Positions 2,309 through 50,900 of a DNA stretch of 64,000 bases are shown one piece after another. The stretch spans positions 186,001 to 250,000 of the forward strand of contig NIVC01000945.1 of assembly GCA_002269645.1 (NCBI GenBank), read 5' to 3'. The notes under the pieces were generated by a model. That model was not told the DNA's origin and did no database searches. It saw only the letters and a program-made list of their open reading frames with translations. The translations under genes and the position numbers were made by a program. Position 1 is the stretch's first letter. The number at the start of each line of letters is the position of its first letter. This stretch comes from Macrostomum lignano. Taxonomy: Eukaryota.

Positions 2309-3029
2309 TTGTACAAACCCTAAAATATATCGATGCCCTGATCGTCTTTGATTTCGGTACTGACAATCAAAAGCCACAGGCCATAATTTTATAGCAAAAA
2401 GTATCATGCTTATTACTAATTATAGTCACAATCAACCGCTGTTACGGTAGAGAGAGCTCGGGACAATTGAGTTTTCCATTGTGTTGTATTGTATTGTATT
2501 GTGTGTGTTTATCATCGTAATTTTTACCAGTCTTTAGGAAAGGCTGACACAGCTGTGTCAGTCCAAGTCAAAGTATTCAAAGCATAGAAAATATACTCTA
2601 GTCTTACAGTTCCTTATAATTTAATTGATCCTGTTAATTTATCTAATTAATTTAGCCGCAACCCCTGGCTTGATTCCATGCACGGCCAAATTCATTTGAG
2701 GCTTACGCACACGAAAATTGGCCGGTGAGAGTGTGCATTGCCTGACGATCAGGCCTGAGTCAATGACTACTCAAGTAACATGTATATAGGGCCGTACACT
2801 CGAAATCAATGGTAAATGTTTTCAAGGCAACTTTTCGCCGGAAAAATACACTACAGAGACAGGAAATTTCAGTATTTTCAAAACTAAAACAGTTATTGGG
2901 TTTCTTAACAGTGTCAGAGAAAGCTCTAATCACACTATTTTGTGCCTCACATGCTGCTCTAACGACGCATTAATCGATTTTCATGTTAAATTGGTCTTGT
3001 CATTATTTTAAACCTTTATTCCAATAAGA

Positions 3030-3215
3030 TGCTTTCCAATTTTCAATAAGATTTCAATAATTTCCAATAAGATATTGACTATGAGCAGAGCTCTGGAAAA
3101 GCGAATGAAAATTGTTGGTAGACACACTGATATTCCAGCGGTACGCAACAACCCGCAGACGGTTGCAAAAAGACAGGAGTTTGCCGAATGGCTCACGAGC
3201 GTTTTTTGGACCACA
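3030..3215 (+). pseudogene. Possible IS630/Tc1-type transposase remnant
   Basis: SRALEKRMKIVGRHTDIPAVRNNPQTVAKRQEFAEWL resembles the linker before the first catalytic Asp; truncated by the 20-bp array. Confidence 0.3.
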
Positions 3216-4078
3216 TTGATGCTTGTTGGACCAAATTGATGCTTGTTGGACCAAATTGATGCTTGTTGGACCAAATTGATGCTTGTTGGACCAAATTGAT
3301 GCTTGTTGGACCAAATTGATGCTTGTTGGACCAAATTGATGCTTGTTGGACCAAACTGATGCTTGTTGGACCAAATTGATGCTTGTTGGACCAAATTGAT
3401 GCTTGTTGGACCAAATTGATGCTTGTTGGACCAAATTGATGCTTGTTGGACCAAATTGATGCTTGTTGGACCAAATTGATGCTTGTTGGACCAAATTGAT
3501 GCTTTTTGGACCAAATTGATGCTTGTTGGACTAAATTGATGCTTGTTGGACCAAATTGATGCTTGTTAGACCAAATTGATGCTTGTTGGACCAAATTGAT
3601 GCTTGTTGGACCAAATTGATGCTTGTTGGACCAAATTGATGCTTGTTGGACTAAATTGATGCTTGTTGGACCAAATTGATGCTTGTTAGACCAAATTGAT
3701 GCTTGTTGGACCAAATTGATGCTTGTTGGATCAAATTGATGCTTGTTGGACCAAATTGATGCTTGTTGGATCAAATTGATGCTTGTTGGACCAAATTGAT
3801 GCTTGTTGGACCAAATTGATGCTTGTTGGACCAAATTGATGCTTGTTGGACCAAATTGATGCTTGTTGGACCAAATTGATGCTTGTTAGATCAAATTGAT
3901 GCTTGTTGGACCAAATTGATGCTTGTTGGATCAAATTGATGCTTGTTGGACCAAATTGATGCTTGTTGGACCAAATTGATGCTTGTTGGATCAAATTGAT
4001 GCTTGTTGGATCAAATTGATGCTTGTTGGACCAAATTGATGCTTGTTGGACCAAATTGATGCTTGTTGGACCAAATTA
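3205..4078. repeat. 20-bp minisatellite GATGCTTGTTGGACCAAATT, ~43 copies
   Basis: Visible 20-bp period. Confidence 0.97.
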
Positions 4079-19800: not shown

Positions 19801-21414
19801 CACTCTCATTATTTACTCATTTGTCACTCTCATTATTCACTCATTTGTCACTATCATTATTCACTCATTTGTCACTCTCATTATTCACTTATTATTTACT
19901 CCCATCATTCACTCATTTGTCACTCTCATTATTCTCTTTTTATTCACTCTCATTATTCACTCATTTTGTCACTCTCATCATTCACTCATTTGTCACTCTC
20001 ATTATTCCCTCATTTGTCACTCTCATTATTCACTCATTTGTCACTCTCATTATTCACTCATTTGTCACTCTCATTATTCACTCATTTGTCACTCTTATTA
20101 TTCACTCATTTTTCACTCCCATCATTCACTCATTTGTCACTCTCATTATTCACTCATTTGTCACTCTCATTATTCACTCATTTGTCACTCTCATTATTCA
20201 CTCATTTGTCACTCTCATTATTCACTCATTTGTCACTCTCATAATTCACTCATTTGTCACTCTCATTATTCACTCATTTGTCACTCCCATCATTCACTCA
20301 TTTGTCACTCTCATTATTTACTCATTTGTCACTCTCATCATTCACTCATTTGTCACTATCATTATTCACTCATTTGTCACTCTCATTATTCACTTATTAT
20401 TCACTCCCATCATTCACTCATTTGTCACTCTCATTATTCTCTTTTTATTCACTCTCATTATTCACTCATTTTGTCACTCTCATCATTCACTCATTTGTCA
20501 CTCTCATTATTCACTTATTTTGTCACTCTCATCATTCACTCATTTGTAACTCTCATTATTCACTCATTTGTCACTCTCATCATTCACTCATTTGTCACTA
20601 TCATTATTAACTCATTTGTCACTCTCATTATTCACTTATTTTGTCACTCTCATCATTCACTCATTTGTCACTCTCATTATTCACTCATTTGTCACTCTCA
20701 TTATTCACTTATTTTGTCACTCTCATCATTCACTCATTTGTCACTCTCATTATTCACTCATTTGTCACTCTCATTATTCACTTATTTTGTCACTCTCATC
20801 ATTCACTCATTTGTCACTCTCATTATTCACTCATTTGTCACTCTCATTATTCACTCATTTGTCACTCTCATTATTCACTCATTTGTCACTATCATTATTC
20901 ACTCATTTGTCCCTCTCATTATTCACTTATTATTCACTCCCATCATTCACTCATTTGTCACTCTCATTATTCTCTTTTTATTCACTCTCATTATTCACTC
21001 ATTTTGTCACTCTCATCATTCACTCATTTGTCACTCTCATTATTCACTTATTTTGTCACTCTCATCATTCACTCATTTGTCACTCTCATTATTCACTCAT
21101 TTGTCACTCTCACCGTCGCGTCGCCGCAGCGCTTCTTCATCAGCCCCCACTGCCTCGCCGAGCGCCTTGTAGAAGTTGCGAGCGTCTGCCGCTGCCAGCT
21201 GACTCTCCCGCAGCTGTCCCTCAACTTCGGTCAGGCACTCAGCCAGGCTTGACCTCAGCTGCTCCAGCCTGTCAGCCAAATCTTCCACATCCAAACTGCT
21301 CAATCTGGCCATTCCTTGATCGCTTCGTCCATTCAATCGAGTCTGTTGAAGCGTTTTAAATTCGTGCGAAATTTCACGAAACGCTTTGACTAATTCGCCA
21401 TTCGAGGATGGCAT
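7712..21414 (-). CDS. DTHD1: DTHD1-like protein (N-terminal coiled coil - ZU5 - ZU5 - UPA - death domain), 10 exons, 949 aa
   Basis: complement(join(21114..21414,17638..17876,16770..17420,15373..15721,14124..14475,13185..13317,9420..9694,8440..8681,8176..8366,7712..7828)). All introns are GT-AG, all phases are compatible, total 2850 nt from ATG to TGA. ZU5-like GVVRLEP..YFMLPHC, second ZU5-like RFSVGKPG..TVPEDAL, UPA-like FRLRFRGNI..LHFNSQMKNRL, death domain MEYLRDLAELVCDNWELLADKL..AYDMLITWVKK..VLILCRAL. The architecture, with no ankyrin repeats or LRR, fits DTHD1; orthology was not tested. Confidence 0.8.
8176..8366 (-). CDS. DTHD1-like exon 9 (death domain)
   Basis: tatag|AC; SVTMEYLRDLAELVCDNWELLADKL..LITWVKKLPVLKNK; donor gtgaga. 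Confidence 0.9.
8440..8681 (-). CDS. DTHD1-like exon 8 (UPA end)
   Basis: tgcag|C; VTERDRFAQRALDQFRGYIEV..KMLICVPK..FVFKSK; donor gtgaga. Confidence 0.9.
8811..9222. mobile_element. Foldback/MULE-type MITE in DTHD1-like intron
   Basis: ~110-bp TIRs built of TTTTCCCGC(A/G)G subrepeats, termini GGTCTATGAA / (rc)GGACCACGAGAA, central (TCTAG)n; flanks CCTTAAAACA and CCTTAAAAGA form a 10-bp TSD with 1 mismatch. Confidence 0.7.
9420..9694 (-). CDS. DTHD1-like exon 7 (UPA)
   Basis: cgcag|GTG; VSLALTASGRLDRTLKQL..FRLRFRGNI..KNRLEL; donor gtgagt. Confidence 0.9.
9826..11060. repeat. 34-bp minisatellite GCAACAGCATCCACCTCCATCGGTGTGCTGAGCT, ~36 copies
   Basis: Two variant classes in alternating blocks; source of three artefact ORFs. 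Confidence 0.97.
11055..11368. mobile_element. Degenerate MITE with CGGACGAA subrepeats
   Basis: Left GTGTGCAGAACATTTTTCGTCCGG versus right (rc) GTTTGCGGACACTTCGTC; repeated CGGAC(A/G)AA. Confidence 0.35.
12322..12762. repeat. CT-rich low-complexity tract
   Basis: Degenerate (CT/CTT/CTC)n. Confidence 0.9.
12887..13095 (+). mobile_element. tRNA-derived SINE
   Basis: A-box TAGTCCAGTGG and B-box GGCTCGATTCC followed by a non-tRNA body. Confidence 0.55.
13185..13317 (-). CDS. DTHD1-like exon 6
   Basis: cgcag|G; FIAFRVKPEFNTDTASRICEAIE..DNLTE; phase 2/0 bridges exons 5 and 7. Confidence 0.85.
13600..14090. repeat. 15-bp G-rich minisatellite GGGATTAGGGGATTT, ~32 copies
   Basis: Visible period; contains TTAGGG. 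Confidence 0.95.
14124..14475 (-). CDS. DTHD1-like exon 5
   Basis: cgcag|CC; SICKNTLRPVTFNFQLPLNP..WSVLDQLD..FRTTRFYDR; donor gtaaac. Confidence 0.85.
14540..15300. repeat. 32-33-bp minisatellite GTAGATTCTGAGTAGATAAAGTAGAGCCCGAG
   Basis: Fills most of DTHD1-like intron 4. Confidence 0.95.
15373..15721 (-). CDS. DTHD1-like exon 4 (ZU5-1 end / ZU5-2)
   Basis: atcag|ATC; IYEDGRWQE..RFSVGKPGIRYSSSVDNRICLTVPEDAL..SSIIQH; donor gtgagt. Confidence 0.9.
15780..16107. repeat. 82-bp tandem repeat x4
   Basis: Units start at 15780, 15862, 15944, 16026. Confidence 0.95.
16770..17420 (-). CDS. DTHD1-like exon 3 (E/R-rich helix + ZU5-1)
   Basis: gccag|CTT; LEEAKRREEERQRQE..GVVRLEPAG..FMLPHC..VVY; donor gtgagt; 651 nt, phase 0/0. 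Confidence 0.9.
17638..17876 (-). CDS. DTHD1-like exon 2 (coiled coil)
   Basis: ttcag|CC GAT; DPNSVATTSDAINSIEDHRELD..AAAIQEE; donor gtgagc. Confidence 0.8.
18050..18720. repeat. CT-rich (CTCTCC/CTCCCT)n tract
   Basis: Polypyrimidine on the + strand. Confidence 0.9.
19325..21113. repeat. 24-bp minisatellite TCACTCATTTGTCACTCTCATTAT, ~74 copies
   Basis: Runs up to the donor of DTHD1-like exon 1. Confidence 0.97.
21114..21414 (-). CDS. DTHD1-like exon 1 (coiled coil)
   Basis: ATG at 21414; MPSSNGELVKAFREISHEF..EALRRRD; donor G|gtgaga, phase 1. Confidence 0.8.
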
Positions 21415-22164
21415 TTTTCTTGCTATTCTTTGTTATAATTCTATTTGTTAATTTTTTAAATATTTAGTTCTAAGGTTTGCTTGGCTAGTCTGTTTCTCTG
21501 TCACGGGCTTCGAGCTGCAGTCCGGCGTTCTAATAATGCTTAATAATGCCCTGAGTGGCTGAGAATACTACTGGAGAAGCTGTTGCTATGGACGCCTCCA
21601 ATGGAAGGGAAAGAGAGAGGGAGGGAGGGGAGAGAGAGGGAGAAGGCAACGGTCAGAAGTTTCCAGCACAGAAAGAGAAGATATAACAGACTTTGTTGAT
21701 GGGGTGGCCCAGCATCCATGCCTGTCTCTCAGAATTGAGAAGTGTACTGAATAACAAAGCATAGCATAGCTACTGCTCAGATAAATATACACGAATGCTC
21801 AATGGGAGGGCTTGGGTTATTAAGCACCTATAGATAGAGAGAGAGAAGTTCATTTCGTCTCCTAAAAATGCGTGGTTCTAGGAGCGCATGTTGAATGATT
21901 AGAAAAAAATAGCTGTGCACACAAAGCGTTAGGTTAAAACACACAAAATGATAACTGTTATTACTCTTACAGGGAGTGTGGCTACTAGATGTGTGAGTGT
22001 CCGGTTTCCTTGGGTAGGCAAGGCAATAGGTAGCTGAAATAACAATGCGGCTTGTAGTAGAAGTTTGCGTTTAACTGGAGCTGACGGAGTTTTTACTTTT
22101 GCATTCGAAATCCTGTTTTTTGGAGCCCAGCCAAGTGGCGAATACGAAGCCAAGTTTGAAGCTA

Positions 22165-22701: not shown

Positions 22702-25700
22702 GAGCGAGACGCATCTTTGTCAGTCCCGTGGACACTCACTGTCATTGCCAAAACAATACCTTGAACTTTTCGCCAATGGCCTGAGAAAATGTCTAGAGGC
22801 ATCTATCACAAGTACATCCCAAAACAGACAGACGTAATCTGTGGAATCGTCAGAAATATATTAGTAGAACTGCTATAGAAAAGGAAAGTGCAAATGGAGT
22901 TTCAATCAGCTGGGAATGCGTATTAGCTAGCTACTCAGCAGATCTAGCTCCGCGTTCTGCATGGCTCATAAAATTTGCAGCTTACAGTTCACAGTCAGAC
23001 ACGTGGTTGGCTACTGTCCAATCATTAATTTAGTTGTTCTCAGCACAGTCTCGGTTGAATTCTTGCCTCCGATTTTTGTATAGACCCTAGAATTTTAGAA
23101 ATTGGGCAATCAGAGCTTAGAGCGACAGTTACTGAGCTTAGAGTGACAGATACGGAGCTTAGAGTGACAGATACGGAGCTTAGAGTGACAGTTACTGAGC
23201 TTAGAGTGACAGATACGGAGCTTAGAGAGACAGATACGGAGCTTAGAGTGACAGATACGGAGCTTAGAGTGACAGATGTGGAGCTTAGAATGACAGATGT
23301 GGAGCTGGAGCTTCGAGAAACATATATCGAGCTTAGAGTGACAGATGCGGAGCTTAGAGTGACATATATTGAGCTTAGAGTGACAGATGCGGAGCTTAGA
23401 GTGACAGATATGGACTATTGAGTTCATAGCTAGGCTACCTTGGCATACCTACATACCTATGTACACTAGTAAAATGTTATGAATACGGTGTTTACTATCA
23501 CATCACAACAGCTTATAGAAAAGTGACAAGTTCAGTCAAAAAGCGCCAAGCTGTCACGCTCTCTTTCACAATGCTTGAAGCCAGAAGAAAGAGGATTGAA
23601 ATCCCCCCTCACAATGGTGGGGCAGTCAGGCGTCGCAACGATGGAACTTCCCATTAAATTGGTTACCAAGCGCTCACAATGGCAGTCATGAAAAGAAATC
23701 AATTGTGGACCTCATCTTCAAGGTGAACTATTTGCATAGCAACTGAGTTGCCATACAACAATAGAAGGAAAGAGTTTATTCTAAGAGCTACTCTTAGCGA
23801 GTGCTGATAAGTGCTGCTTTAAAGTTCTAAACATTCTGCATGTATGAGCCAAGTGTGATTCTATCCCATTCACGATTGAATTTAGTCTACTCACTAGCAA
23901 TCTACGCCCCCCGTTGGGGAGCCAAAGAAATGCAATACACGTTATTTTAATACGCTACATGTATCCTTGAAATCTTAAAAAATCTACTATCAAACCTTGT
24001 AAGCCTTGACATGTCAGTAATTCCCCCCCACAAGCTTTAACATATCAACTTCCCCCCCTTGACATCTCAGCCATGCCCCCAATAAGCCTTGGAAATCTAA
24101 AAATATCTGTCAACCTTCTAACCCTAACCCTAGCCTAACCCCTACCCTAACCCTAACCCTAACCTAACCCTAAAGCATTGAAATTTCAGTAATTCTCTCT
24201 AAGAGTCATTATAGCACTACTACAGCATTATAGCGATTCCCTGCAAGCCTCGACATCGTAGGGATTCCCAAATGAATATCTTAATTTCGACATGAAGCTT
24301 CTTTTATTTTTTACATTACGCTTTTTTAATCAGCGATCCCTCCCCTGAGGAGGCATCAAATAATGTAATAAAAAGTTTTCAATAAACTACATGTAGCTTC
24401 TGACTTTAGCCTTGAAATCTCATTTATACCCCCGTGAGCCTTGACATCTCAGCTATTCCCCCGTAAGCCTTAACATGTCAGCGATGGCGCCCATAAACCT
24501 TGAAATCTGAAAAATCCCCTGCTAACCTTGAAACCCGATAAAATATAACCCTCAACCCACACCTGACCTAAACCTAACTTTAACCCAACCTAAAGCCTTG
24601 AAATCTCAGCAATTCTTCTCCCCTAAGCCTTGACATTTTAGTGATTCCTTCTTTAAGAATCACAGCACTATAACGATTTCCACCTAGCTTTGACATCGTA
24701 GCAATTCCCAAATGAATCTTTTAACTTCGACATGACTTTTCTTTTATGTATACATAGTTCTACTTTTATTTTTTACATGACTCTTCTTCTATCAGCGCCC
24801 CCCGTGGCGAGCCAACAAAGAATGCAATAAAAAAAATTGAGTAAAGTACATGAACTTTGAACTAGCTTCTGACTATTGCTTTGACATCTCAGAAACCCCC
24901 CCGTAATCTCAGTTATTCTCTGAGAGCCTTGACGTCTCAGTTTTTCTCCCCAGCACAGCATTATAGCTGCATTTAATTTTTCCATGACACCTTTCATGTC
25001 TGACATGACGCTTCTTTTATTCTACTATGATGCTTCTTAATTTTTTAAATGACACTTTCATTAGTTTTTAAATGACGCTTCTATGATTTTTTCATGACGC
25101 TTCTATGATTTTAACATGACGCTTCTATGATTTTAACATGACGCTTCTATGATTTTTTCATGACGCTTTTATGATTTTTTACATGACGCTTGTATGATTG
25201 TTTACATGACGCTTCTATGATTTTTAAAATGACGCTTCTATGATTTTTTAAATGACGCTTCTATGATTGTTTACATGACGCTTTTATGATTTTTAAATGA
25301 CGCTTCTATGATTGTTTACATGACGCTTTTATGATTTTTACATGACGCTTCTATGATTTTTTACATGACGCTTCTATGATTGTTTACATGACGCTTCTAT
25401 GATTGTTTACATGACGCTTCTATGATTTTTTAAATGACGTTTTTTTGATTATTATATGACGCCTCTATGATTTTTTAAATGACGCTTCTATGATTTTTAT
25501 ATTACGCTCTTACGATTTTTTACATGACGCTTTTATGATTGTTTACACGATGCTTCTATGATTTTTTACATGACGCTTCTATGATTTTTTAAATGACGCT
25601 TCCATGATTGTTTACATGACGCTTCTATGATTTTTTACATGACGCTTCTATGATTGTTTACATGACGCTTCTATGATTGTTTACATGACGCTTCTATGAT

Positions 25701-31700: not shown

Positions 31701-34700
31701 TTCTCCCTGATTCGTGTGTCTCTCTCAGATGTTTCTCACTGATTCATGTGTATCTATCAGATGTTTCTCACTGATTCATGTGTATCTCTCAGATGTTTCT
31801 CACTGATTCATGTGTATCTCTCAGATGTTTATCACTGATTCATGTGTCTCTATCAGATGTTTCTCACTGATTCATGTGTCTCTCTAAGATGTTTCTCCCT
31901 GATTCGTGTGTCCCTCTTATATGTTTCTCATTGTTTCAACGTGCTACTTCGCAATTACGAATTAATTGCGTAATTTTTGTTTCAAGTAGATTTTTTGTTT
32001 CACTCGTTAGCTCTAGAGATATGTGCAGGTCTGTGCCTCTCCATGCTGCTTGCTTGAGCATTCGGTCTTTCCAGGAAATGCAAACGCTTCAAGACTTCGC
32101 AAACACCTAACTCGGGTAAATACCAGAACAGGCTGCTGCACCGGAGAAAAAGATAGAAAAGATGGTTAAGCCATGTTTGCATAGGCGGCCAAAATAGTTT
32201 GTTTTAGTTTTCTGTTTGCCTAACTGAATCGCTTGGCTTGCCATTTCTTGTAGAGGAAAATGGAATCTGTCTTGTCGGCGGTCCGGATGATGCATTAACA
32301 ACTTTATCTTCATTGCCTCACCTGTTAGACAGGTCAGTGTCACCTGTTAGACAGGACAGTGTCACCTGTTAGACAGGATAGTGTCACCTGTTAGACAGGA
32401 TAGTGTCACCTGTTAGACAGGATAGTGTCACCTGTTAGACAGGATAGTGTCACCTGTTAGACAGGACAGTGTCACCTGTTAGACAGGATAGTGTCACCTG
32501 TTAGACAGGATAGTGTCACCTGTTAGACAGGATAGTGTCACCTGTTAGACAGGATAGTGTCACCTGTTAGACAGGATAGTGTCACCTGTTAGACAGGATA
32601 GTGTCACCTGTTAGACAGGATAGTGTCACCTGTTAGACAGGATAGTGTCACCTGTTAGACAGGATAGTGTCACCTGTTAGACAGGATAGTGTCACCTGTT
32701 AGACAGGACAGTGTCACCTGTTAGACAGGATAGTGTCACCGGTTAGACAGGATAGTGTCACCTGTTAGACAGGATAGTGTCACCTGTTAGACAGGACAGT
32801 GTCACCTGTTACACAGGATAGTGTCACCTGTTAAACAGGATAGTGCCACCTGTTAGACAGGATAGTGTCATCTGTTAGACAGGATAGTGTCACCTGTTAG
32901 ACAGGATAGTGTCACCTGTTAGACAGAATAGTGCCACCTGTTAGACAGGATAGTGTCACCTGTTAGACAGGATAGTGTCACCTGTTAGACAGGACAGTGT
33001 CACCTGTTAGACAGGATAGTGTCACCTGTTAGACAGGATAGTGTCACCTGTTAGACAGGATAGTGTCACCTGTTAGACAGGATAGTGTCACCTTTTAGAC
33101 AGAATAGTGTCACCTGTTAGACAGGACAGTGTCACCTGTTAGACAGGATAGTGTCACCTGTTAGACAGGATAGTGTCACCTGTTAGACAGGATAGTGTCA
33201 CCTGTTAGACAGGATAGTGTCACCTGTTAGACAGGATAGTGTCACCTGTTAGACAGGATAGTGTCACCTGTTAGACAGGATAGTGTCACCTGTTAGACAG
33301 GATAGTGTCACCTTTTAGACAGAATAGTGTCACCTGTTAGACAGGATAGTGTCACCTGTTAGACAGGATAGTGTCTCCTGTTAGACAGGATAGTGTCACC
33401 TGTTAGACAGGATAGTGTCACCTGTTAGACAGGATAGTGTCTCCTGTTAGACAGGATAGTGTCACCTGTTAGACAGGATAGTGTCACCTGTTAGACAGGA
33501 TAGTGTCACCTGTTAGACAGGATAGTGTCACTTGTTACACAGGTTTAATTTAATTTCTACATTAAAGATTCTGAGAAAACACTTAGGGGTGCACATAACT
33601 ATTTCTTTCTTATTTTTTCTAGTTAATGAATATTCCTCATATAAATTCTGTTTAGAAAAAAAGTAATATTAAATGAAGCAGGTGGTGGAACAGCTGACTG
33701 CTTCGGGAGTCAGTTTTCATTCCTTAAGCCTGCTTAAGTCTGCTGCACCCGAACAATCGTGTATTGCATAATCCCAGCCGAGTGGATCTCTATTAATATT
33801 TCTCACTGATTCATGTGTCTCTCTCAGATGTTTCTCCCTGATTCATGTGTCTCTCTCAGATGTTTCTCACTGATTCATGTGTCTCTCTCATATGTTTCTC
33901 ACTAATTCATGTGTCTCTCTTAGATGTTTCTCACTGATTCATGTGTCTCTCTCAGATGTTTCTCACTGATTCATGTGTCTCTCTCAGATGTTTCTCCCTG
34001 ATTCATGTGTCTCTATTAATATTTCTCCCTGATTCATGTGTCTCTCTCGGATGTTTCCCACTGATTCATGTGTCTCTATTAATGTTTCTCACTAATTCAT
34101 GTGTCTCTATTAATGTTTCTCACTGATTCATGTGTCTCTCTAAGATGTTTCTCCCTGATTCGTGTGTCTATCTGAGATGTTTCTCCCTGATTCGTGTGTC
34201 CCTCTTATATGTTTCTCATTGTTTCAACGTGCTACTTCGCAATTAGATTTTTGTTTCACTCGTTAGCTCTAGAGAAATGCACAGGTTCGCCTCTCCATGC
34301 TGCTTGCTTGAGCATTCGGTCTTTCCAGGAAATGCAAACGCTTCAAGACTTCGCAAACACCTAACTCGGGTAAACACCAGAACAGGCTGCTGCACCGGAG
34401 AAAAAGATAGAAAAGATGGTTAAGCCATGTTTGCATAGGCGGCCAAAATAGTTTGTTTTAGTTTTCTGTTTGCCTAACTGAATCGCTTGGCTTGCCATTT
34501 CTTGTAGAGGAAAATGGAATCTGTCTTGTCGGCGGTCCGGATGATGCATTAACAACTTTATCTTCATTGCCTCACCTGTTAGACAGGTCAGTGTCACCTG
34601 TTAGACAGGATAGTGTCACCTGTTAGACAGGACAGTGTCACCTGTTAGACAGGATAGTGTCACCTGTTAGACAGGATAGTGTCACCTGTTAGACAGGATA

Positions 34701-36278: not shown

Positions 36279-37069
36279 TTTACTGTTGCCTTGAGCACTG
36301 GATTTGTGAGTTAATGAGGTCATGCTAAAGTCGCGTGCGTGATTAAAGTAACTGATATGATGCATTTTACAGTAGGTATATTACATTTACGAGCTAGTAG
36401 TAGTAATAGTAGTAGTAGTAGTTATCGTGCATCAGGTTTCACAATAATTTCTTCTGTTTCATAAGCAAAATACTATTTTGTTATAATTATGGAAAAACAA
36501 TAAAGTAATGGGCATGCATAATTCCTACAATTGATATAATAATCAATAATGAAAATTGAAATATTTAGTTTTATTTCGTAGAAAAGCCACATAAACGATA
36601 GTCTTAAATATTTTTATTTATTTGTAAAGCTTTGCAGTACACTTAGAAAAATACATAATTTTAATTTCTACGAAACCAAGTCTTATCTAAAATCTATGCG
36701 AACACGCGAGTCATCTACTCATCGCATTCAGTAGCAAGTAGAGGCTGTGGAGAATATACAAAAACTATGGAAGGAACATTTAAAAGGAACTTGACGCAAA
36801 CATTATTAAAATCTAAAAGTTGTAACAAAGCGCCAGTGTTAAAATTACAAAGCATTTGAACCGTCTGCTTCCAAATGTGACTTTTTTACAACGCACCTCT
36901 TTCTACATTCCTTATGCGTACCTATAACTACAGGTAAAGCTACGTATTCCACAAAAATCGTTTAGCCCGAAAATGCTCTCCTTCCAACTATCTACGATAC
37001 ATAATTGTAGTCTGAACTTCCTGTGTGTGATGCTCCAGTTTGACATTGACTTTAAAATCTACGCGAACA

Positions 37070-37255
37070 ACCTTACGATTGAAAGGTCGGGGTTCGATTA
37101 TTGACCCGCTCGGAACAATTTGTGTCCTTGAGCAAGACACTTAACTCTACATTGCTTCAGTTCACCCAGCTGTAAAATGGGTAATTGAGGGTGTTTTTGG
37201 CGACCCCCAGTACGCAGCTGTTCAGATGGCAGGTGTAATCAATTATTTGTTATTA
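37070..37255 (+). mobile_element. CORE-type (MIR-like) SINE, 5'-worn copy
   Basis: B-box GGTTCGATT, then TGTGTCCTTGAGCAAGACACTTAACTCTACATTGCTTCAGTTCACCCAGCTGTAAAATGGG (37121-37181), matching the MIR CORE pattern. Confidence 0.7.
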
Positions 37256-37480
37256 CATAACTAACCAGTAGTTTACAGCAGTCTACCATAGTCTACCCCA
37301 GTTTACGCTAGTGTACTCCCAGGTTTAATCATGATTTATGTCAGTTTACCCAAGTTTTACCATGGCATACCCTAGTTTAGCTGGCTGAAGTCAGTCTAAC
37401 CCAGGTTTAAGCAAATTTGCTCCCAAGTGACATCCGCGTGTCACTAGGAAAAGTCGCTCCAACGCAATAGCAGTTAGTTG

Positions 37481-38443
37481 TCACAACACCTGGCAATAAG
37501 CTTCTGCTGCAGCATCCGTGGCGGCGACGGCGGCGGCGCCTGCTTCATCTTTTCGTCTCGTCCGACGATAGCCGACAAACTCAGCGACGGGGCAGTCCAG
37601 CGGCGTCAGCTCGATGCAGTCCAAATAGACGCCCTCCTTCAGATGGCTCTTGCTAATCCGGCTGTTGACAATCTGGACTCGGACGCCGCTGCAGCGCGGC
37701 AGGCTCAGGCGGCCGAGTCGAAGGCAGAACCAGCGCTCGAAGCCGTATCTGAAGGCCAGACTGCGCCACTTCCGCTCGGGAATGCGAGCTCGGAGCAGGC
37801 AGTCGAGCCTGGGCGCATCCGGCACCAGCAGCACCTCAGTGACGCCCTGTAGGCGCCAGTGAGCACCGAGTTTCGCCCGCAGAGTCACCTGATAGATGCC
37901 TTTAGGCAGGCCCGGCACGTAGTCGTGAATGCTCAGACGGTTGCCCTCTGATCCGATGCCGGACCTGCCGGAGCCCGCGACAACCGCTGCATTGCGACAG
38001 TTCAAATCGTGCAGGTAGACAACTCGGCCAGAGTAACTGTCTGCTTCTTCAAGCGACGGCAGGTAGGTGCCATTGTTCAAACTCTCCACAGGGATGCAGA
38101 GCTTCCGTTCCAACGCGTGGTTCAAGGATTCGTACAGCGATTCTCTGGAGCTGGATCGCGGTCCAGCCGACGTCCAGAACACCTCGGCGCCGAACAGTCT
38201 GCAGTTCTCCGGGCTGGTCTGGCACAGGCTGAGCAAGTCGTCGCTGCTCAAATGAGAAGAGATCCTACGGAGACACTCGTAGGGTAAGCGGCTGAGGGAA
38301 AACTCGAATTGTTGTTGATCGTCACCTGCTGTTGCCACCTCCAAGCCATCGATTTCGTCTGATCTCGTCGACTGAACTGGAAACTCGTCCAATATTGACA
38401 ACTGTTGAGTACGCTTACTCAATGCTGAGCTGCTGGAGCCCAT
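37481..38443 (-). CDS. Intronless F-box protein with PP2 (phloem protein 2)-like C-terminal domain and N-myristoylation motif, 320 aa
   Basis: First ATG at 38443 gives MGSSSS (G2/S6). F-box LSRLPYECLRRISSHLSSDDLLSLCQTS..AEVFW. PP2-like motifs TYLPSLEEADSYSGRVVYLHDL, LPKGIYQVTLRAKLG, WFCLRLGRL, HLKEGVYLDCIELTP. Uninterrupted ORF with GC-rich codons. F-box is secure; PP2 assignment is by eye. Confidence 0.8.
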   Translation of the reverse strand: MGSSSSALSKRTQQLSILDEFPVQSTRSDEIDGLEVATAGDDQQQFEFSLSRLPYECLRRISSHLSSDDLLSLCQTSPENCRLFGAEVFWTSAGPRSSSRESLYESLNHALERKLCIPVESLNNGTYLPSLEEADSYSGRVVYLHDLNCRNAAVVAGSGRSGIGSEGNRLSIHDYVPGLPKGIYQVTLRAKLGAHWRLQGVTEVLLVPDAPRLDCLLRARIPERKWRSLAFRYGFERWFCLRLGRLSLPRCSGVRVQIVNSRISKSHLKEGVYLDCIELTPLDCPVAEFVGYRRTRRKDEAGAAAVAATDAAAEAYCQVL

Positions 38444-38664
38444 TATTAGGGAGTAGAACTGTGACGCAAACTTGCGTGGTGGTAGACGTGTAATCGACCT
38501 AGACACGGGAGATAGAGAGTTATAATTTATCCCCACCGGGGAGGCGGCGGTGGGGCTGGGCGAGCCCTCTCGTGCAGCCTTCGCGTCCAGTAGAATTCGA
38601 CCGACCAGTTTTGTCGATTCCTTTTTTCAGACACGCGGAAGAACACCAAACTTCCTGCTTGGGG

Positions 38665-38694
38665 CTAACCCTAACCCTAACCCTAACCCTAACC
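38665..38694. repeat. Interstitial telomeric repeat (CTAACC)x5
   Basis: Reads as TTAGGG-type repeat on the minus strand, ~220 bp upstream of the F-box ATG. Confidence 0.85.
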
Positions 38695-44900: not shown

Positions 44901-47900
44901 GTGAGTCCGACGCTCTAACTACTAGGCTGCTGGGTTAGAATGGGGTGGTGGGTGAGAATGGGGTGGTGGGTTACAATGGGGTGGTGGGTGAGAATGGGGT
45001 GGTGGGTTACAATGGGGTGGTGGGTGAGAATGGGTTGGTGGGTGAGAATGGGGTGGTGGGTGAGAATGGGGTGGTGGGTTACAATGGGGTGGTGGGTTAG
45101 AATGGGGTGGTGGGTTACAATGGGGTGGTGGGTTAGAATTGGGTGGTGGGTTAGAATGGGGTGGTGGGTGAGAATGGGGTGGTGGGTGAGAATGGGGTGG
45201 TGGGTGAGAATGGGGTGGTGGGTGAGAATGGGGTGGTGGGTGAGAATGGGGTGGTGGGTTACAATGGGGTGGTGGGTGAGAATGGGGTGGTGGGTTAGAA
45301 TAGGTGAGGATTGGAACGGGTTCTGATCAAACAAGATGGCATGGAATGTGCAATATTGGCAACAGACGTGTGGCAGTGTATAGAAAAGGACGCAAAATAA
45401 ACTCACAGCGCAGATTGTATACATTGTTATAGTATTGTAAAGCAAAAGAATTGGGCTTTAACTTGATGACTTGGCGCTGGACAATTACCTTATAACTAAG
45501 ACAAAAATTTCAAAAAGTAAATTACAATTTGGATTTATTTTGAGAATGTTCGAGAAAATTAATGAATATCATACAGCACTAAGTGCCCGAACAAGCTTAC
45601 GAGTATAAATATTTAGTACAGTAATCATAAATCATTCGAAAAAAATGAGCAGAATTTAGCAGAAAAATATCGAGAAAGGAACTGCAAATAGGTTATATTA
45701 AAGGTCAGTATTAATATATATGACTGCACTGTTAATTATCATGAACTAATTTAATTATCTTCCAAAATATTTCATAGCACAAAGATTAATACAATACTTA
45801 TAAAATGACTCCCAGCAGAAATTATTATTTTTGATAACAAGTAAAACAAATTTGGCGCAAATTTAATATTCCAACCGCAGAGTTGACTACTTAGTTTAGA
45901 GAAATATCGTGAGCAGAGTAGAAACAATATGAGTCACTTCGAAGTAGCAAAAAACACAATCGAGCACAAATGTTTGAATTGAAAAAAATACAAAAAATCG
46001 TAATACAATACATTAATCTGCACAAAACACGAAAGCTACTGCAAGTAGCAATGCGACGATACTAATGTAGATTTACAGTTTCTTCCTTTCTTTCTCTAAG
46101 GCACGCCAGAATTCGGATTGGCAAAGTTTGGAGCAGCTAGGTTTCTAATCAGCGTGGCCGAGCTCGTACGAATCAGCCTGGGCGTCAGGTAGCTGCGCCT
46201 GCGGCTCACAATGCCCGCTGCTGGGGGCGGCGTCTGCGTCTCCGTCGACCAGCGGCGGCTGCCCGCTGAAGAGGTCAGGCCTGCGGGCGGAGTGGGGTGG
46301 GTGACTGGAGTGAGGTGGGTGACTGGAGTGGGGTGGGTGACTGGAGTGGGGTGGGTGACTGGAGTGGGGTGGGTGACTGGAGTGAAGTGGGTGACTAGAG
46401 TGAGGTGGGTGACTGGAGTGAGGTGGGTGACTGGAGTGGGGTGGGTGACTGGAGTAAGGGGGGGACTGGAGTGAGGTGGGTGACTGGAGTGAGGTGGGTG
46501 ACTGGAGTGAGGTGGGTGACTGGAGTGAGGTGGGTGACTGGAGTGAGGTGGGTGACTGGAGTGAGGTGGATGACTGGAGTGAGGTGGGTGACTGGAGTGA
46601 GGTGGGTGACTGGAGTGAGGTGGATGACTGGAGTGGGGTGGGTGAATGGAGTGGGGTGGGTGAATGGAGTGGGGTGAGTGAATAGAGTGGGGTGGGTGAC
46701 TGGAGGAGGGAGGTGGGTGTTTGGGTGTTAAGATAATTAAAAGTAATAAGAGGCTACCCTCGTAATTGGAGATTGACTGAGTGTTGAAAAAGTTTACAAT
46801 CAGCAGAGTTAGCCGTTCCAATTCAAAAGCATATTAGCACAACTTACAATATAAATATGAAAAAGTGAAATTAATGGCATGAAGGAATAAAATCAATGCA
46901 AAAGTGAGTTTTCTACTCAAATCGAAACTAAATTTGTCACTGTTTAACTCGATATTCTAAATTTTTGTTAAAAAATAGAAGTTCCAGATTGTTTAACAGT
47001 AATTTCTGGCAAGCAATATTTTCATCAGGTGATTCTGATTAATTTGGTTGATGAGGAAATGCGATTATCCATAAAATCCAATATAATAAAAGGGGATATT
47101 TAAAATATGAAACAAATTACTTGAAAAGTGAAAACTGTATCCTTCGTCTGCAAATTAAAGATGAGGATTGAGCAAATCTAATATCAACAGGTTAAATTGG
47201 GCTATAATTCAATCACGGCAGATAATAAATTAAGATAATTAACATAATAATGTTCATTAAGCAAGTTATTTACTACAAAGCTGAACAATAGTTGTGATAA
47301 TTGAGACCTCAGCTTACCCAGACGCCTTTTCAACAGACCAACTAAACAATTCACTTTGAGCAGAATCCAGCCCGCTTAAGTCGCCCACCGTTTCTGCTTT
47401 TGTTGTTGCTTTTAGCAATTTAAAGAAAAAGAAAATAAATATGATTAAACAGAATAAGGATAGGTGGAGACGATTTGATTTTAGCGTACTAATCAAATTT
47501 CAAATTTGTCAATGTAGAGATCTCCAAGCATAGTAGGCTACTAAAAGTAGCAAGATAAAAACATGAATACTACGGCTCGTATTTAAAATTAACATGCGTC
47601 ATACTCTATTTTCAGTAATGCATGCAGTATCACGTAAACAGCGAGTGATCGTTACATAGTCCAAAAAACCGGTTTTCAACCTAAATTTCCAAATATGGTA
47701 AAGGTCAAGTTAAATGCGATTTAGGCTTCACCCCTTTCTATGTAAAACCCCACAGGTCAGGAGACAAAGTCCATCTTTTGATTCTTATCAATAAAACCAG
47801 TTTGAAGCTCAAGGTCGAATGAAATCGTGTATAAATACAAGCAAAAATCCGAGCTGAAACCTCAGACTCGGAGCAGCCTTAAGAGATCTTAGGCTTAGCC

Positions 47901-50900
47901 AGAGTTACTAAGCAAGGCTATATCTCTGAGAGAGACAAACACCAATTGGTAAGCCTTTGTTAGAGTCTTTGTTATTTGAAGTCTTTGTTATTCGATTATT
48001 GAGAGCTGTGTCATTGCCGGCCGTTACTGATAAGTCGATTTATTGAGTTATTGAATTTGAGGCCCCCCTATTCCTAAGGGATTGGATAGGATCGGCGGAC
48101 CGGTTCCGATACTCTTAGTTGATTACTGATTGATTGATTTTGGTACCCTAGAGTAACCGATAGGAGCAAACGACTCCGATTCCGTTATTTCTAGAAGAAG
48201 ACGCCCTTTCGGAGGACCTCGTTATTGTTATAGAATTGACTTTGTTATTAGGGCGCATCTCTGCACTCGAGGAATATATTGATTTCTGCACTCGAGGAAT
48301 ATATCGATTTCTGCACTCGAGGAATATACTGACGTCGACGGACTAAGTTATTAAGCTCTCATATTCGGCCGATTCTATAATTCAAGACTACTCCGGAGGA
48401 AGAATATTTGAAGAGACGAGCTCGGAGAACCTGCCCGACAAAGAAGAGGAGCCCGCATCAGTAAGTGAACACTGAACCTTGTTCCCAGGCTTGAGGTCTG
48501 GAAGTGGGAGTTCGTGCGTTTAGACACTAGATTAATTTCTCTCTCTCTTCTCTTTCTCTCTCTCTCTTTCCCTCTCTCTCTAGTGTGCTAAAGCGAACTC
48601 TTCATCAAATTTGATTGTGCAGGTTTTAAGGTCAGATTTGACTGGGTGGACTTAAAGGTCAAATTTGATTGGGTGGCCTTAAAGGTCGAATTTGACTGGG
48701 TGGCCTTAAAGGTCAAATTTGACTGGGTGGCCTTAAAGGTCAAATTTGACTGGGTGGCCTTAAAGGTCAAATTTGATTGGGTGGCCTTAAAGGTCAAATT
48801 TGACTGGGTGGCCTTAAAGGTCAAATTTGATTGGGTGGCCTTAAAGGCCAAATTTGACTGGGTGGCCTTAAAGGTCAAATTTGATTGGGTGGCCTTAAAG
48901 GTCAAATTTGATTGGGTGGCCTTAAAGGTCAAATTTGATTGGGTGGCCTTAAAGGTCAAATTTGATTGGGTGGCCTTAAAGGTCAAATTTGATTGGGTGG
49001 CCTGACAGATACTAAAAATAACTAGATGGGCCACTCAGGCGTATATTAGTAACTTAGTAAAACAGCTTTCTACTTTTTAGTTCAGTAGCAAAGAAGAATA
49101 CTGCTGAAATGACTTTGATAAGTTTAGAAGCCCAAGCTTGCAGGCGTAACCAGCTTGCTTATTGGTTCAGCAATAATGTACATTAGCCAGTCCATTGAAA
49201 TGTACATGGCAGCTTTAGACTGGAACAACGGAGGAAAGTAATAAAAATTGGGCGGCGGGGCGGGGGTAGAGGTTCTGCGTGAAGTTTGAGGGTTTAAGCT
49301 GGGGGGGGGCGAAGAGCCAATAAATGCGCCTTATCTTTAAAAAAATAAAATGCTTCAGTTTAACTTACTACTAAACTGAAAGTAGCTTACACGCAAATGT
49401 GCTGAGTGGCCCATCTAGTTATTCTAGTATTTGTGGGTGGCTTAAAGGTAAAATTTAATTGGGTTGATTCTAAGGGTCAAATTTTATTGGGTGGCTTTGA
49501 AGATCAATTTTTATTGGGTGGCCTAGAAGGTCAAATTTGATTGGTTGGCCTTGAAGGCCAAATTTGATTGGGTAGATTTCAAGGTCAAATTTTATTGGGT
49601 GGCCTTGAAGGCCAAATTTGATTGGGTAGATTTGAAGGTCAAATTTTATTGGATGGCTCAATTATAATTACGAGCGTAGGTTTCCCCCTGGGAGCTTAAT
49701 AATGATAATCAGTAATCACGCCACCCCGAAAGCCAGTTTTAGTATCAAATAAAAACTTGAATTTCAATGAATAAATAAATATTGTCTACTTTAATTCTTA
49801 GGCGCCAAAGCATATATAATAATTAATATAATCATAATTAAAATTTACCTTCATCATCGGAATGAGTCATCGCCAATGAAGTGTCGGTGAATTCGTGTTT
49901 CTCCTGCTCAATATTAGCAGTCTGCTCTTCATGTTGCTCCTGTTGTTGCTCTGATTGTTGTGAATCTCGGGGAAAATCTTCAACACCAGTTGTTGTAGGG
50001 TTGCAGACTTGTTGTACAGCTTCCTGTTGCTGATTATTGGCAAGGGGTAAGGTTTAGAGATGCAGTTGATTGAATGCCGAGCATCAATTGTTTATTGATT
50101 GCATTTATTCTTAAAATGGGTACCTGGGGTGCATTAGGTGACTGTGAAGTGGCATCGGTGAATGTAGTGGGTGCGTGATTATAGTGGGTGGGTGAAGAGT
50201 GGGTGTGTGATTGGAGTGGGGTGGGTGAATGGAGTGGAATGGGTGAATAGAGTGGGTGGGTGAACGGAGTGGGTGGGTGAATGGAATGAGGTGGGAAAAC
50301 GGAGTTGGGTGAGTGAATGGAATGAGATGGGTGAACGGAGTTTGGTGGGTGAACGGAGTAGTGTGGGTGACTGGAGTGGGATGGCGTGGGTGAATGGAAT
50401 GAGGTGGGAAAACGGAGTTGGTGATTGAATGGAATGAGATGGGTGAACGGAGTGTGTTGGGTGAACGGAGTAGTGTGGGTAACTGGAGTGGAGTGGGTGA
50501 ATGGAATGAGGTGGGAAAACGGAGTTGGGTGAGTGAATGGAATAATATGGGTGAACTGAGTCTGAGTGTGGTGGGTGAACAGAGTTGGGTGCGTGAATGG
50601 AGTGGAATGGGTGATTAGAGATCTTCGACGTGAACAAAGCTCCAATGGCTATTGATTCATATCGTGTACTCTAAATATTGGCACTTTGACACAAGAAACG
50701 CACCTGATCAGGATTAACCGATTCCGCCGAAGCTCCAGCGTCCGCTACGTCATTTAAATCATTTTCTTTGTCGTCATCAGATGACTGGAGGCCACTGAGT
50801 TGTTGGAGAACTTTGGCCGTCTTACCGGTTCCAACGGTCAGCTGATCCAGCAGGGTCTCAGCTGCGCCGGGCCCTTCTGACGAAGGTAGCAATGCTTTCA

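What the first reader, a model, noticed from the sequence alone, without database searches (positions are those of the whole stretch)
37481..38443. Intronless, myristoylatable F-box + PP2-like lectin gene: a plant-type architecture in an animal genome
Seen: a single uninterrupted 320-aa ORF starting MGSSSS, with an F-box at about residues 45-90, followed by motifs TYL..EADSYSGRVVYLHDL, LPKGIYQVTLRAKLG, WFCLRLGRL and HLKEGVYLDCIELTP. It has no introns, while both flanking genes have 10 or more exons. Known: MGxxxS + F-box + phloem-protein-2 domain is the layout of the plant AtPP2-A/B F-box proteins, and PP2 domains bind glycans or RNA. I know of no characterised animal example. Inference: this could be a membrane-anchored SCF adaptor that recognises glycans, acquired by horizontal transfer or retained from a patchy ancient family. 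Codon composition resembles the neighbouring exons, so any transfer would be old or ameliorated.
Basis: partly seen in the sequence, partly recalled or inferred. Interest (0 to 1): 0.78.

Follow-up and report, generated by a model that had tools for sequence, protein, structure and literature searches.

The report
Animal F-box gene with plant-lectin-type domain
An intronless 320-residue gene sits between intron-rich animal-type genes and joins an F-box to a very divergent copy of the PP2/Nictaba lectin fold; that layout is studied only in plants, but unstudied relatives exist in bdelloid rotifers and this copy has lost the sugar-binding tryptophans.

Summary
There is one uninterrupted 320-codon ORF on the minus strand (37481-38443) with every quoted motif. 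Pfam finds an F-box above threshold (residues 50-83).

The PP2 call is right, but only by indirect evidence. The protein alone scores 12.4 bits against Pfam PP2 (cut-off 25). Its only detectable relatives are 35 F-box proteins that all match PP2. A profile built without the query scores it at 72.6 bits. A profile comparison with tobacco Nictaba gives E=8.5e-6. The AlphaFold model is a jelly-roll that matches PP2 and Nictaba structures as well as carbohydrate-binding modules, and does not match FBXO2-type domains.

The named relatives are all bdelloid rotifers, where the gene is also intronless. So the layout is not unique in animals, and nothing points to a recent plant transfer.

Nictaba's key sugar-site residues Trp15, Trp41 and Trp151 are Leu, Val and Leu here, so glycan binding is doubtful.

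The N-terminal MGSSSS fits a myristoylation pattern. I also found a C-terminal CQVL (CaaX-like) motif. Neither is conserved in relatives.

My best reading is a divergent, lineage-restricted SCF substrate receptor, a new member of a known family. Interest is moderate.

The parts
37481..38443 (-). Single-exon coding sequence, 320 codons plus TGA stop
   Evidence: ORF list and translation. It is the only copy in the window by tblastn. GC3 is 0.70 and CpG observed/expected is 1.0.
38420..38443 (-). N-terminus MGSSSSAL: Gly2 and Ser6 fit the permissive N-myristoylation pattern
   Evidence: Read from the sequence. The pattern G-{EDRKHPFYW}-x(2)-[STAGCN]-{P} is quoted from memory of PROSITE PS00008. 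It is not conserved in any of 35 relatives. The model shows residues 1-40 as disordered.
38171..38296 (-). F-box, residues 50-91 (LSRLPYECLRRISSHLSSDDLLSLCQ...VFW)
   Evidence: Pfam PF00646 at 23.7 bits, above the 20.5 cut-off. The family profile matches the F-boxes of FBXO31 (5vzt_B, E=3.4e-5) and FBXW7. Modelled as helices 55-91 with pLDDT 84-87.
37601..38101 (-). PP2/Nictaba-type beta-sandwich (jelly-roll) domain, residues 115-281
   Evidence: Pfam PP2 gives only 12.4 bits on the query, but 35 of 36 family members match PP2. The leave-one-out family HMM scores the whole query at 72.6 bits. hhalign against Nictaba gives E=8.5e-6. AF2 pLDDT is about 90 over most strands. Foldseek finds PP2 (7vs6, 7w4b) and Nictaba (8ad2) at E about 1e-3.
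37925..37999 (-). Query-specific insertion and loop, residues 149-173 (NCRNAAVVAGSGRSGIGSEGNRLSI), replacing the conserved VCWL(D/E)I(S/T)G strand that holds Nictaba's Trp41
   Evidence: Alignments A1 and A3. hhalign. pLDDT is below 50.
37484..37537 (-). Ala-rich C-terminal helix (residues 303-319) ending in CQVL, a CaaX-like prenylation motif (residues 317-320, 37484-37495)
   Evidence: Sequence. Predicted helix 303-319. Absent from all relatives. The analogy to the CaaX F-box proteins FBXL2 and FBXO10 rests on PMC9988375 and PMC11042265.
38664..38694 (.). Interstitial telomere-like repeat, (CCCTAA)4-5 on the plus strand, about 220 nt upstream of the ATG
   Evidence: Sequence. A second short run lies at 24145-24162, so the repeat is not specific to this gene. 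Any role is unknown.
38519..38531 (-). TATA-like GATAAATTATAAC about 80 nt upstream of the ATG; a possible core promoter, unverified
   Evidence: Read from the sequence only. No test was done.

Best explanation
This is a stand-alone, intronless gene for a 320-residue F-box protein. Its C-terminal half is a strongly diverged member of the PP2/Nictaba jelly-roll family.

It belongs to a small set of intronless animal F-box+PP2 genes. That set is otherwise seen across bdelloid rotifers and in one unidentified eukaryote (P0001). The query is the most divergent member.

The likely mechanism is inferred, not shown. The F-box would dock on Skp1 and so recruit Cul1/Rbx1, and the beta-sandwich would present a substrate for ubiquitination. 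In other words, it would act as an SCF substrate receptor.

The tryptophans that form Nictaba's GlcNAc pocket are replaced in this protein. The ligand is therefore probably not bound in the canonical Nictaba mode. It may not be a glycan at all.

The MGSSSS start and the CQVL end could add myristoyl and prenyl anchors and place the receptor on membranes. This is a motif-level inference only.
For: **ORF and F-box**
- Intact ORF with an F-box above the Pfam cut-off.

**Relatives**
- Exhaustive phmmer over 1.84 billion representatives gave only two hits. P0001 scored E=3.2e-6 over query residues 46-298, and P0002 scored E=4.5e-5. Both carry PP2 above threshold, at 41.6 and 40.7 bits.
- A profile of the C-terminal domains found 39 proteins, almost all F-box+PP2. 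The named ones are all bdelloid rotifers.
- 35 of 36 aligned members match PP2 and none matches FBA.
- A family HMM built without the query scores it at 72.6 bits, while 200 shuffles score 0.9 bits or less.

**Link to Nictaba and fold**
- The family profile against Nictaba gives hhalign E=8.5e-6 and hmmsearch E=0.0078 over the whole Nictaba domain.
- The AF2 model has a beta-sandwich at pLDDT about 90. Foldseek hits PP2 and Nictaba structures.

**Gene structure in relatives**
- Rotifer-type genes are also single-exon. In two loci they sit between an ankyrin gene and an Exo_endo_phos gene.

**Sugar site**
- Mapped from the Nictaba structure paper (PMC11632377) onto alignments.
- The query has L122, Y127, A-A-V and L268 where Nictaba has W15, Y21, V39-A40-W41 and W151.
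- P0001 keeps all of these residues.
Against: - There is no expression evidence, no ortholog close enough for a dN/dS test and no interaction data.
- The query alone fails the Pfam PP2 cut-off.
- Foldseek does not separate PP2/Nictaba from CBM6, CBM35 or Cry domain III. All score E about 1e-4 to 1e-3 with TM-scores of 0.5-0.66 on the target.
- Loss of five family-conserved Trp residues could mean relaxed constraint rather than a new ligand.
- Both lipidation motifs are short and unconserved, so either could be chance.
- The source organism was not identified.
Confidence: 0.6

Rival explanations
1. One reading: a membrane-anchored SCF adaptor that recognises glycans. It would be a lectin-type F-box protein working like plant F-box-Nictaba or mammalian myristoylated FBXO27 (Fbs3).
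For: - It is homologous to the Nictaba/PP2 lectin family.
- Tyr21's equivalent (Y127) is kept.
- MGSSSS fits the myristoylation pattern and CQVL is CaaX-like.
- Fbs3/FBXO27 is a precedent for a myristoylated sugar-binding F-box protein (PMC6389600).
- Relatives P0001 and the rotifer proteins keep most of the pocket residues.
Against: - In the query the equivalents of Trp15, Trp41 and Trp151 are Leu, Val (or Arg in the alternative alignment) and Leu. These residues make the GlcNAc hydrogen bond and the stacking contact in Nictaba.
- The strand carrying Trp41 is replaced by a disordered insertion.
- The lipidation motifs are not conserved in relatives.
Confidence: 0.2
2. A decaying or non-functional relic. 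The reading frame is still open, but the gene is no longer under selection or is not expressed.
For: - It is the most divergent member of its family, at 24-33% identity.
- Five Trp positions conserved in relatives are Leu or Val here.
- It carries a 25-residue disordered insertion.
- No identical or close protein exists in 5.8 billion clusters.
Against: - 320 codons are open with no frameshift relative to relatives over residues 46-298.
- Codon-position periodicity is strong: GC3 0.70 against GC2 0.49.
- F-box consensus residues are intact.
- The core strands of the fold model confidently.
Confidence: 0.15
3. A recent horizontal transfer from a plant, alga or fungus into this animal genome.
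For: - The gene is intronless while its neighbours are intron-rich.
- Its G+C is somewhat higher (59%) than most neighbouring exons (40-61%).
- PP2/Nictaba domains are concentrated in Archaeplastida and fungi (PMC6362431).
Against: - No plant or fungal protein reached E<=0.001 in the exhaustive search. The only hits were a bdelloid rotifer protein and P0001.
- The rotifer homologs are also intronless, so lack of introns is a family trait.
- CpG observed/expected and GC3 fall in or near the range of host exons.
- There are no flanking inverted repeats and no poly(A) remnant.
- IMG/VR and JGI metagenome scans found nothing.
Confidence: 0.05
4. The ORF is not a separate gene but a terminal or alternative exon of the upstream RhoGEF-like gene on the same strand.
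For: - All exon-like ORFs from 50.6 to 64 kb are on the minus strand, upstream of this ORF.
- The frame stays open for 62 codons upstream of the ATG.
- A CAG lies 20 nt before the ATG.
Against: - Relatives are stand-alone proteins of 290-342 residues that start near the same point.
- The putative acceptor has no polypyrimidine tract.
- The ATG has a good start context.
Confidence: 0.05

Closest known systems
Plant F-box-Nictaba proteins (e.g. Arabidopsis At2g02360; the AtPP2-B group)
   Same: The domain order is the same: an N-terminal F-box followed by a C-terminal PP2/Nictaba jelly-roll of about 150 residues. Homology is supported through profiles. The inferred role as an SCF receptor is also the same.
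   Different: - The animal family is too far from plant sequences for single-sequence detection.
- The query lacks Trp15, Trp41 and Trp151 of the sugar pocket.
- It has a 25-residue insertion and an Ala-rich C-terminal helix ending in CQVL.
- The plant protein binds N-acetyllactosamine-type glycans and acts in defence (PMC6389600). Nothing comparable is known here.
Uncharacterised bdelloid rotifer F-box/PP2 proteins (Didymodactylos carnosus, Rotaria spp., Adineta spp.; P0002-P0035)
   Same: They are the closest named relatives. They share the F-box+PP2 layout, are intronless and come from an animal (spiralian) host.
   Different: - Identity is only 24-33%.
- Rotifer proteins carry a conserved linker of about 100 residues (…IPLMKLIYFYLIDRKR…) that the query and P0001 lack.
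- They end right after the domain, and they keep VCW and the WK(S/T)G Trp.
- Synteny is not shared.
Nictaba and Cus17/PP2 phloem lectins (PDB 8ad2, 7vs6, 7w4b)
   Same: Same jelly-roll domain family. Foldseek gives E about 1e-3 and target TM-scores of 0.48-0.58. Sequence profile E-values are 0.0078 and 8.5e-6.
   Different: They are single-domain soluble lectins with no F-box, and their GlcNAc pocket is intact.
Mammalian sugar-recognising F-box proteins FBXO2, FBXO6 and FBXO27 (Fbs1-3, FBA domain)
   Same: A functional analogy only: an F-box plus a beta-sandwich lectin domain. Fbs3/FBXO27 is N-myristoylated and membrane-bound (PMC6389600).
   Different: The domain family is different. There is no Pfam FBA hit and no FBA structure in the Foldseek top 50.
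Prenylated F-box proteins FBXL2 and FBXO10 (CaaX)
   Same: A C-terminal Cys-x-x-Leu motif on an F-box protein, which could direct geranylgeranylation and membrane targeting (PMC9988375, PMC11042265).
   Different: The substrate-binding domains are unrelated. The CQVL motif here is untested and is not conserved in relatives.

Membership tests
F-box proteins (SCF substrate receptors) | Sequence match to the F-box domain above the curated threshold | tested here: met
   PF00646 at 23.7 bits against a 20.5 cut-off, residues 50-83. The family profile hits the F-boxes of FBXO31, FBXW7 and SKP2 in the PDB.
F-box proteins (SCF substrate receptors) | Binding to Skp1 and assembly into an SCF complex | not testable with these tools
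   Needs co-immunoprecipitation, yeast two-hybrid or complex modelling with the host SKP1.
PP2 / Nictaba lectin domain (PF14299, IPR025886) | Sequence match to PF14299 above the gathering score | tested here: not met
   The query alone gives 12.4 bits against a cut-off of 25, E=0.16.
PP2 / Nictaba lectin domain (PF14299, IPR025886) | Homology to bona fide PP2 domains shown through intermediate sequences or profiles | tested here: met
   - All 35 relatives match PF14299, with a best E-value of 7.8e-14.
- The leave-one-out HMM scores the query at 72.6 bits and shuffles at 0.9 bits or less.
- hhalign against Nictaba gives 83% probability and E=8.5e-6.
PP2 / Nictaba lectin domain (PF14299, IPR025886) | Jelly-roll fold like Nictaba and Cus17 | tested here: inconclusive
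   The AF2 model is a beta-sandwich with pLDDT about 90. PP2 and Nictaba chains are hit at E about 1e-3, but CBM6, CBM35, CBM4 and Cry domain III score as well or better.
PP2 / Nictaba lectin domain (PF14299, IPR025886) | Conserved carbohydrate-site residues Trp15, Tyr21, Val39, Trp41 and Trp151 (Nictaba numbering) | tested here: not met
   The query has Leu, Tyr, Ala, Val and Leu at these positions. The site is defined in PMC11632377. P0001 keeps all five.
PP2 / Nictaba lectin domain (PF14299, IPR025886) | Binding of GlcNAc oligomers or N-/O-glycans | not testable with these tools
   Needs a glycan array or ITC/SPR on the recombinant domain.
FBA-type sugar-recognising F-box proteins (FBXO2/6/27) | FBA (F-box associated, PF04300) domain after the F-box | tested here: not met
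   No FBA hit at E<=10 for the query or at E<=0.01 for any of the 36 members. No FBXO2 or FBXO6 chain is among the 50 best Foldseek matches.
N-myristoylated proteins | Met-Gly start with a small, uncharged residue pattern and Ser/Thr at position 6 | tested here: met
   MGSSSSAL. The pattern is permissive, and no relative begins with MG.
N-myristoylated proteins | Actual modification by N-myristoyltransferase | not testable with these tools
   Needs metabolic labelling and a G2A mutant.
CaaX-prenylated proteins | Cys at the fourth position from the C-terminus followed by a-a-X | tested here: met
   The protein ends ...AYCQVL*. Gln at a1 is non-canonical, and X=Leu would favour geranylgeranylation by general knowledge. 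The motif is not conserved in relatives. Modification is untested.

The most novel reading that the evidence does not exclude
The gene could be a working member of an old, patchily kept (or anciently transferred) animal lineage of Nictaba-type F-box proteins. In this lineage it would have swapped the GlcNAc pocket for a new ligand and gained two lipid anchors (myristoyl and prenyl). That would make it a membrane-bound SCF receptor of a kind described only in plants.
Probability: 0.15. Interest if true: 0.6.

Novelty: new member of a known kind. Interest (0 to 1): 0.42.

Why it matters
[quoted passage not shown] This gene and its rotifer relatives show that the "plant" F-box-Nictaba layout also exists in animals as an intronless family. 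That is a concrete starting point for two questions. One is whether the family is ancestral to eukaryotes and mostly lost, or was transferred. The other is what such receptors recognise in animal cells. The loss of the sugar-binding tryptophans in this copy is a natural contrast to P0001 and the rotifer proteins for testing how ligand specificity changes in this fold. The practical weight is modest until expression and binding are shown.

Tried and rejected
- **Single-sequence searches.** The word-index search of 5.8 billion clusters gave nothing, phmmer against PDB sequences gave nothing and no exact product is on record.
- **AF2 without an alignment.** Unusable, with pLDDT 35.
- **Full-length 3-sequence profile.** Found only P0001, probably because F-box and low-complexity words filled the candidate list. 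Restricting the profile to the C-terminal domain fixed this.
- **Scans of JGI metagenome contigs and IMG/VR viral contigs with the profile.** No relatives, so there is no sign of a viral or environmental donor.
- **Rfam on the window.** Nothing.
- **Attempts to name the source organism.**
  - PDB searches with neighbouring exons gave only weak ARHGEF11/12 hits.
  - Pfam gave a near-threshold Death domain and a weak RhoGEF hit.
  - DRR639055, the source of P0001, appears in no paper held.
  - The species of the window and of P0001 remain unknown, and 'Lophotrochozoa' is unverified.
- **Synteny with rotifer-type loci.** None by tblastx.
- **Transposon or retrocopy origin.** No inverted repeats of 40 nt or more around the gene and no poly(A) tract after the stop.
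- **NJ tree with Nictaba as the only outgroup.** It pairs the query with P0001 at only 52% bootstrap.
- **FBA identity.** Rejected.

Full report
**1. Observation**

The window has one uninterrupted ORF on the minus strand. Its ATG is at 38443 and its TGA stop at 37483-37481, giving 320 codons.

Met1 is the only methionine in the protein. The frame is open for 62 more codons upstream but holds no other ATG. The ATG has A at -3 and G at +4.

The ORF is 59% G+C, with GC1/GC2/GC3 of 0.59/0.49/0.70. This periodicity is typical of coding sequence. No second copy or fragment exists in the window (tblastn).

**2. Domains**

Pfam finds an F-box at residues 50-83, at 23.7 bits against a cut-off of 20.5. 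The PP2 model (PF14299) is only hinted at: 12.4 bits against a cut-off of 25, E=0.16, residues 180-281.

**3. Relatives**

- The word-index search found nothing.
- An exhaustive phmmer over 1.84 billion representatives found only two proteins. P0001 scored E=3.2e-6 with query 46-298 aligned to 34-268. P0002 scored E=4.5e-5.
- Both carry PP2 above threshold (41.6 and 40.7 bits). F-box and F-box-like also clear their cut-offs in P0002 (33.0 and 32.6 bits). In P0001, F-box-like reaches only 21.3 bits against a cut-off of 24.3.
- P0002 is from the bdelloid rotifer Didymodactylos carnosus. The assemblies GCA_905250885.1 and GCA_905249995.1 are named in PMC7943196.
- A profile of the three C-terminal domains then recovered 39 proteins, nearly all annotated F-box+PP2. 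The named ones come from Didymodactylos, Rotaria and Adineta.
- Scanning the 36-row alignment A3 against Pfam, 35 members match PP2, 35 match F-box-like and none matches FBA.
- An HMM built without the query scores it at 72.6 bits (59.5 bits with P0001 also removed). Two hundred shuffles of the query score 0.9 bits or less.
- The family profile aligns to tobacco Nictaba over the whole domain. hmmsearch gives E=0.0078 and hhalign gives 83% probability and E=8.5e-6.

Homology of the C-terminal half to the PP2/Nictaba family is therefore well supported through intermediates.

**4. Structure**

- With alignment A3, AlphaFold2 gives mean pLDDT 68.
- The F-box helices (55-91) reach pLDDT 84-87.
- An eight-or-so-stranded beta-sandwich spans 115-281, mostly at pLDDT 85-96.
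- The N-terminus (1-40) and a loop (149-173) are disordered. A C-terminal helix covers 303-319.
- Foldseek against the PDB returns carbohydrate-binding modules (CBM6, CBM35, CBM4), Cry-toxin domain III and hinokiresinol synthase. It also returns phloem lectin PP2 (7vs6, 7w4b, 7vub) and Nictaba (8ad2). All of these sit at E about 1e-4 to 1e-3.
- The fold agrees with PP2/Nictaba but does not single it out.

**5. Sugar site**

The Nictaba-chitotriose structure defines the pocket as Thr14, Trp15, Tyr21, Val39, Ala40, Trp41, Asp148, Lys149 and Trp151. Trp15, Tyr21, Val39, Trp41 and Trp151 are conserved in plant relatives (PMC11632377).

| Nictaba residue | Query | P0001 | Rotifer proteins |
|---|---|---|---|
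| Trp15 | Leu122 | Trp | mostly His |
| Tyr21 | Tyr127 | Tyr | Tyr |
| Val39-Ala40-Trp41 | Ala-Ala-Val (Asn-Arg-Leu region in the alternative alignment) | Val-Cys-Trp | mostly Val-Cys-Trp |
| Trp151 | Leu268 | Trp | mostly Trp |

This mapping comes from three independent alignments.

- The Val39-Trp41 equivalent in the query lies inside the disordered insertion.
- Two further family-conserved Trp positions (the WR and WDC motifs) are also Leu in the query.
- The canonical GlcNAc pocket is thus degenerate in this copy.
- Glycan binding cannot be assumed. The changes could reflect a new ligand or relaxed constraint.

**6. Lipid-anchor motifs**

MGSSSSAL fits the permissive myristoylation pattern. 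I also noticed that the protein ends in CQVL, a CaaX-like motif preceded by an Ala-rich helix.

Membrane-tethered F-box proteins are known. Fbs3/FBXO27 uses myristoylation (PMC6389600). FBXL2 and FBXO10 use CaaX geranylgeranylation (PMC9988375, PMC11042265).

Neither motif occurs in any relative. They are leads, not findings.

**7. Genomic setting and origin**

*Neighbourhood.* The gene lies in a G+C-rich island (37.4-39.1 kb, 56% G+C) within a 44% G+C, repeat-rich window. On the same strand there are two sets of exon-like ORFs, from 8.1 to 21.4 kb and from 50.6 to 64 kb:
- The first set includes a Death-domain exon at 8158-8418, scoring 22.1 bits against a cut-off of 22.6.
- The second set includes a DH/RhoGEF-like exon with weak ARHGEF11/12 similarity.

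*Animal versus plant.* A Death domain, a DH-type RhoGEF, long introns and the lack of any plant hit all argue for an animal genome.

*Composition.* CpG observed/expected in the ORF is 1.0, against 0.7-1.3 in neighbouring exons. GC3 is 0.70, against 0.44-0.67. The ORF is therefore host-like, at the high end.

*Signs of mobility.* There are no flanking inverted repeats, no poly(A) remnant and no viral or metagenomic relatives.

*Gene structure in relatives.* Rotifer-type genes are also single-exon. In two loci they sit between an ankyrin gene and an Exo_endo_phos gene. Lack of introns is therefore a family trait, and the family is inherited vertically at least within that group. The window shares no synteny with those loci.

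*Tree.* A rough NJ tree pairs the query with P0001 (52% bootstrap) beside the rotifer clade. Both also lack the conserved linker of about 100 residues found in rotifer proteins.

*Bearing on the second refutation test.* Relatives do exist in a spiralian group, but no close orthologs appear anywhere. This fits a patchy family. It is neither a broad vertical distribution nor a recent transfer.

**8. What is known**

A 2019 survey found the Nictaba domain mostly in Archaeplastida and fungi, with 'three hits' in Metazoa. It favoured differential loss over transfer (PMC6362431). A review of sugar-recognising F-box proteins treats F-box/Nictaba as a plant group, with only At2g02360 characterised (PMC6389600). 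I found no paper describing an animal member. This locus is a new, very divergent member of a known family in an unusual host, not a new kind of system.

**9. Verdict**

The layout holds, while lectin function, uniqueness in animals and transfer do not.
- The most likely role is an SCF substrate receptor with a diverged PP2-type recognition domain and possibly lipid anchors (confidence about 0.6).
- Main rivals are a true glycan-binding receptor (0.2), a relic ORF (0.15), a recent transfer (0.05) and an exon of the neighbouring gene (0.05).

Noticed in passing
It follows an Ala-rich predicted helix (residues 303-319).
   Followed up: partly
window 38664-38694 and 24145-24162: Short interstitial telomere-type repeats, (CCCTAA)4-5 and (CCCTAA)3. 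The first lies about 220 nt upstream of the F-box gene's ATG.
   Followed up: partly
window 37050-37200: A SINE-like element just downstream of the gene. It has a tRNA-like 'ggttcgattc'-type box and the segment 'gtgtccttgagcaagacacttaac...cagctgtaaaatgggta'. Next to it, at 37250-37420, is a degenerate short tandem repeat.
   Followed up: no
window 32164-~35000: A long minisatellite with a 22-nt period and more than 100 copies. Two near-identical 79-codon ORFs at 32110-32346 and 34364-34600 show that a block of about 2.25 kb is duplicated.
   Followed up: partly
window 56756-57808 (-): A tandem repeat of about 1 kb stays in frame inside a 686-codon ORF (SALSLMCLCHL repeated about 30 times). It lies between two exon-like parts of the RhoGEF-like gene. 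It could be an intronic minisatellite or a coding expansion.
   Followed up: no
window 3008-3834, 9824-11104, 13573-14135, 18104-18601, 19653-21359, 44915-45445, 46096-46821, 48588-49034, 59102-60131: Many further minisatellite arrays create long spurious ORFs in several frames. The window is unusually rich in tandem repeats.
   Followed up: no
window 8158-8418 (-) and 17545-17910, 21100-21432 (-): A Death-domain exon just under the Pfam cut-off, and coiled-coil-like exons further upstream on the same strand. These probably belong to one large multi-exon gene to the left of the F-box gene.
   Followed up: partly
L001 43-130: The called N-terminus of P0001 (MFLNYLKLVYASFIYYMLLYLQSVFFLTD) is probably not real. 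A splice-acceptor-like 'tttttccttacag' sits right before a second ATG (MEAALSV...), so the true protein is likely about 261 residues.
   Followed up: no
L002 1983-18253 and L005 4420-9183: The rotifer-type F-box/PP2 genes are flanked by an ankyrin-repeat gene and an Exo_endo_phos gene. This holds both in D. carnosus and in a contig of metagenome assembly ERZ26165376, so synteny is conserved. L004 and L005 are 50% and 44% G+C, unlike the 31% of the D. carnosus loci.
   Followed up: partly
A3 columns about 100-225 (P0002-P0035): Rotifer-type proteins share a strongly conserved linker of about 100 residues between the F-box and PP2 (…SATHYNDEAIE…IPLMKLIYFYLIDRKR…). It has no Pfam match and is absent from the query and P0001.
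   Followed up: no
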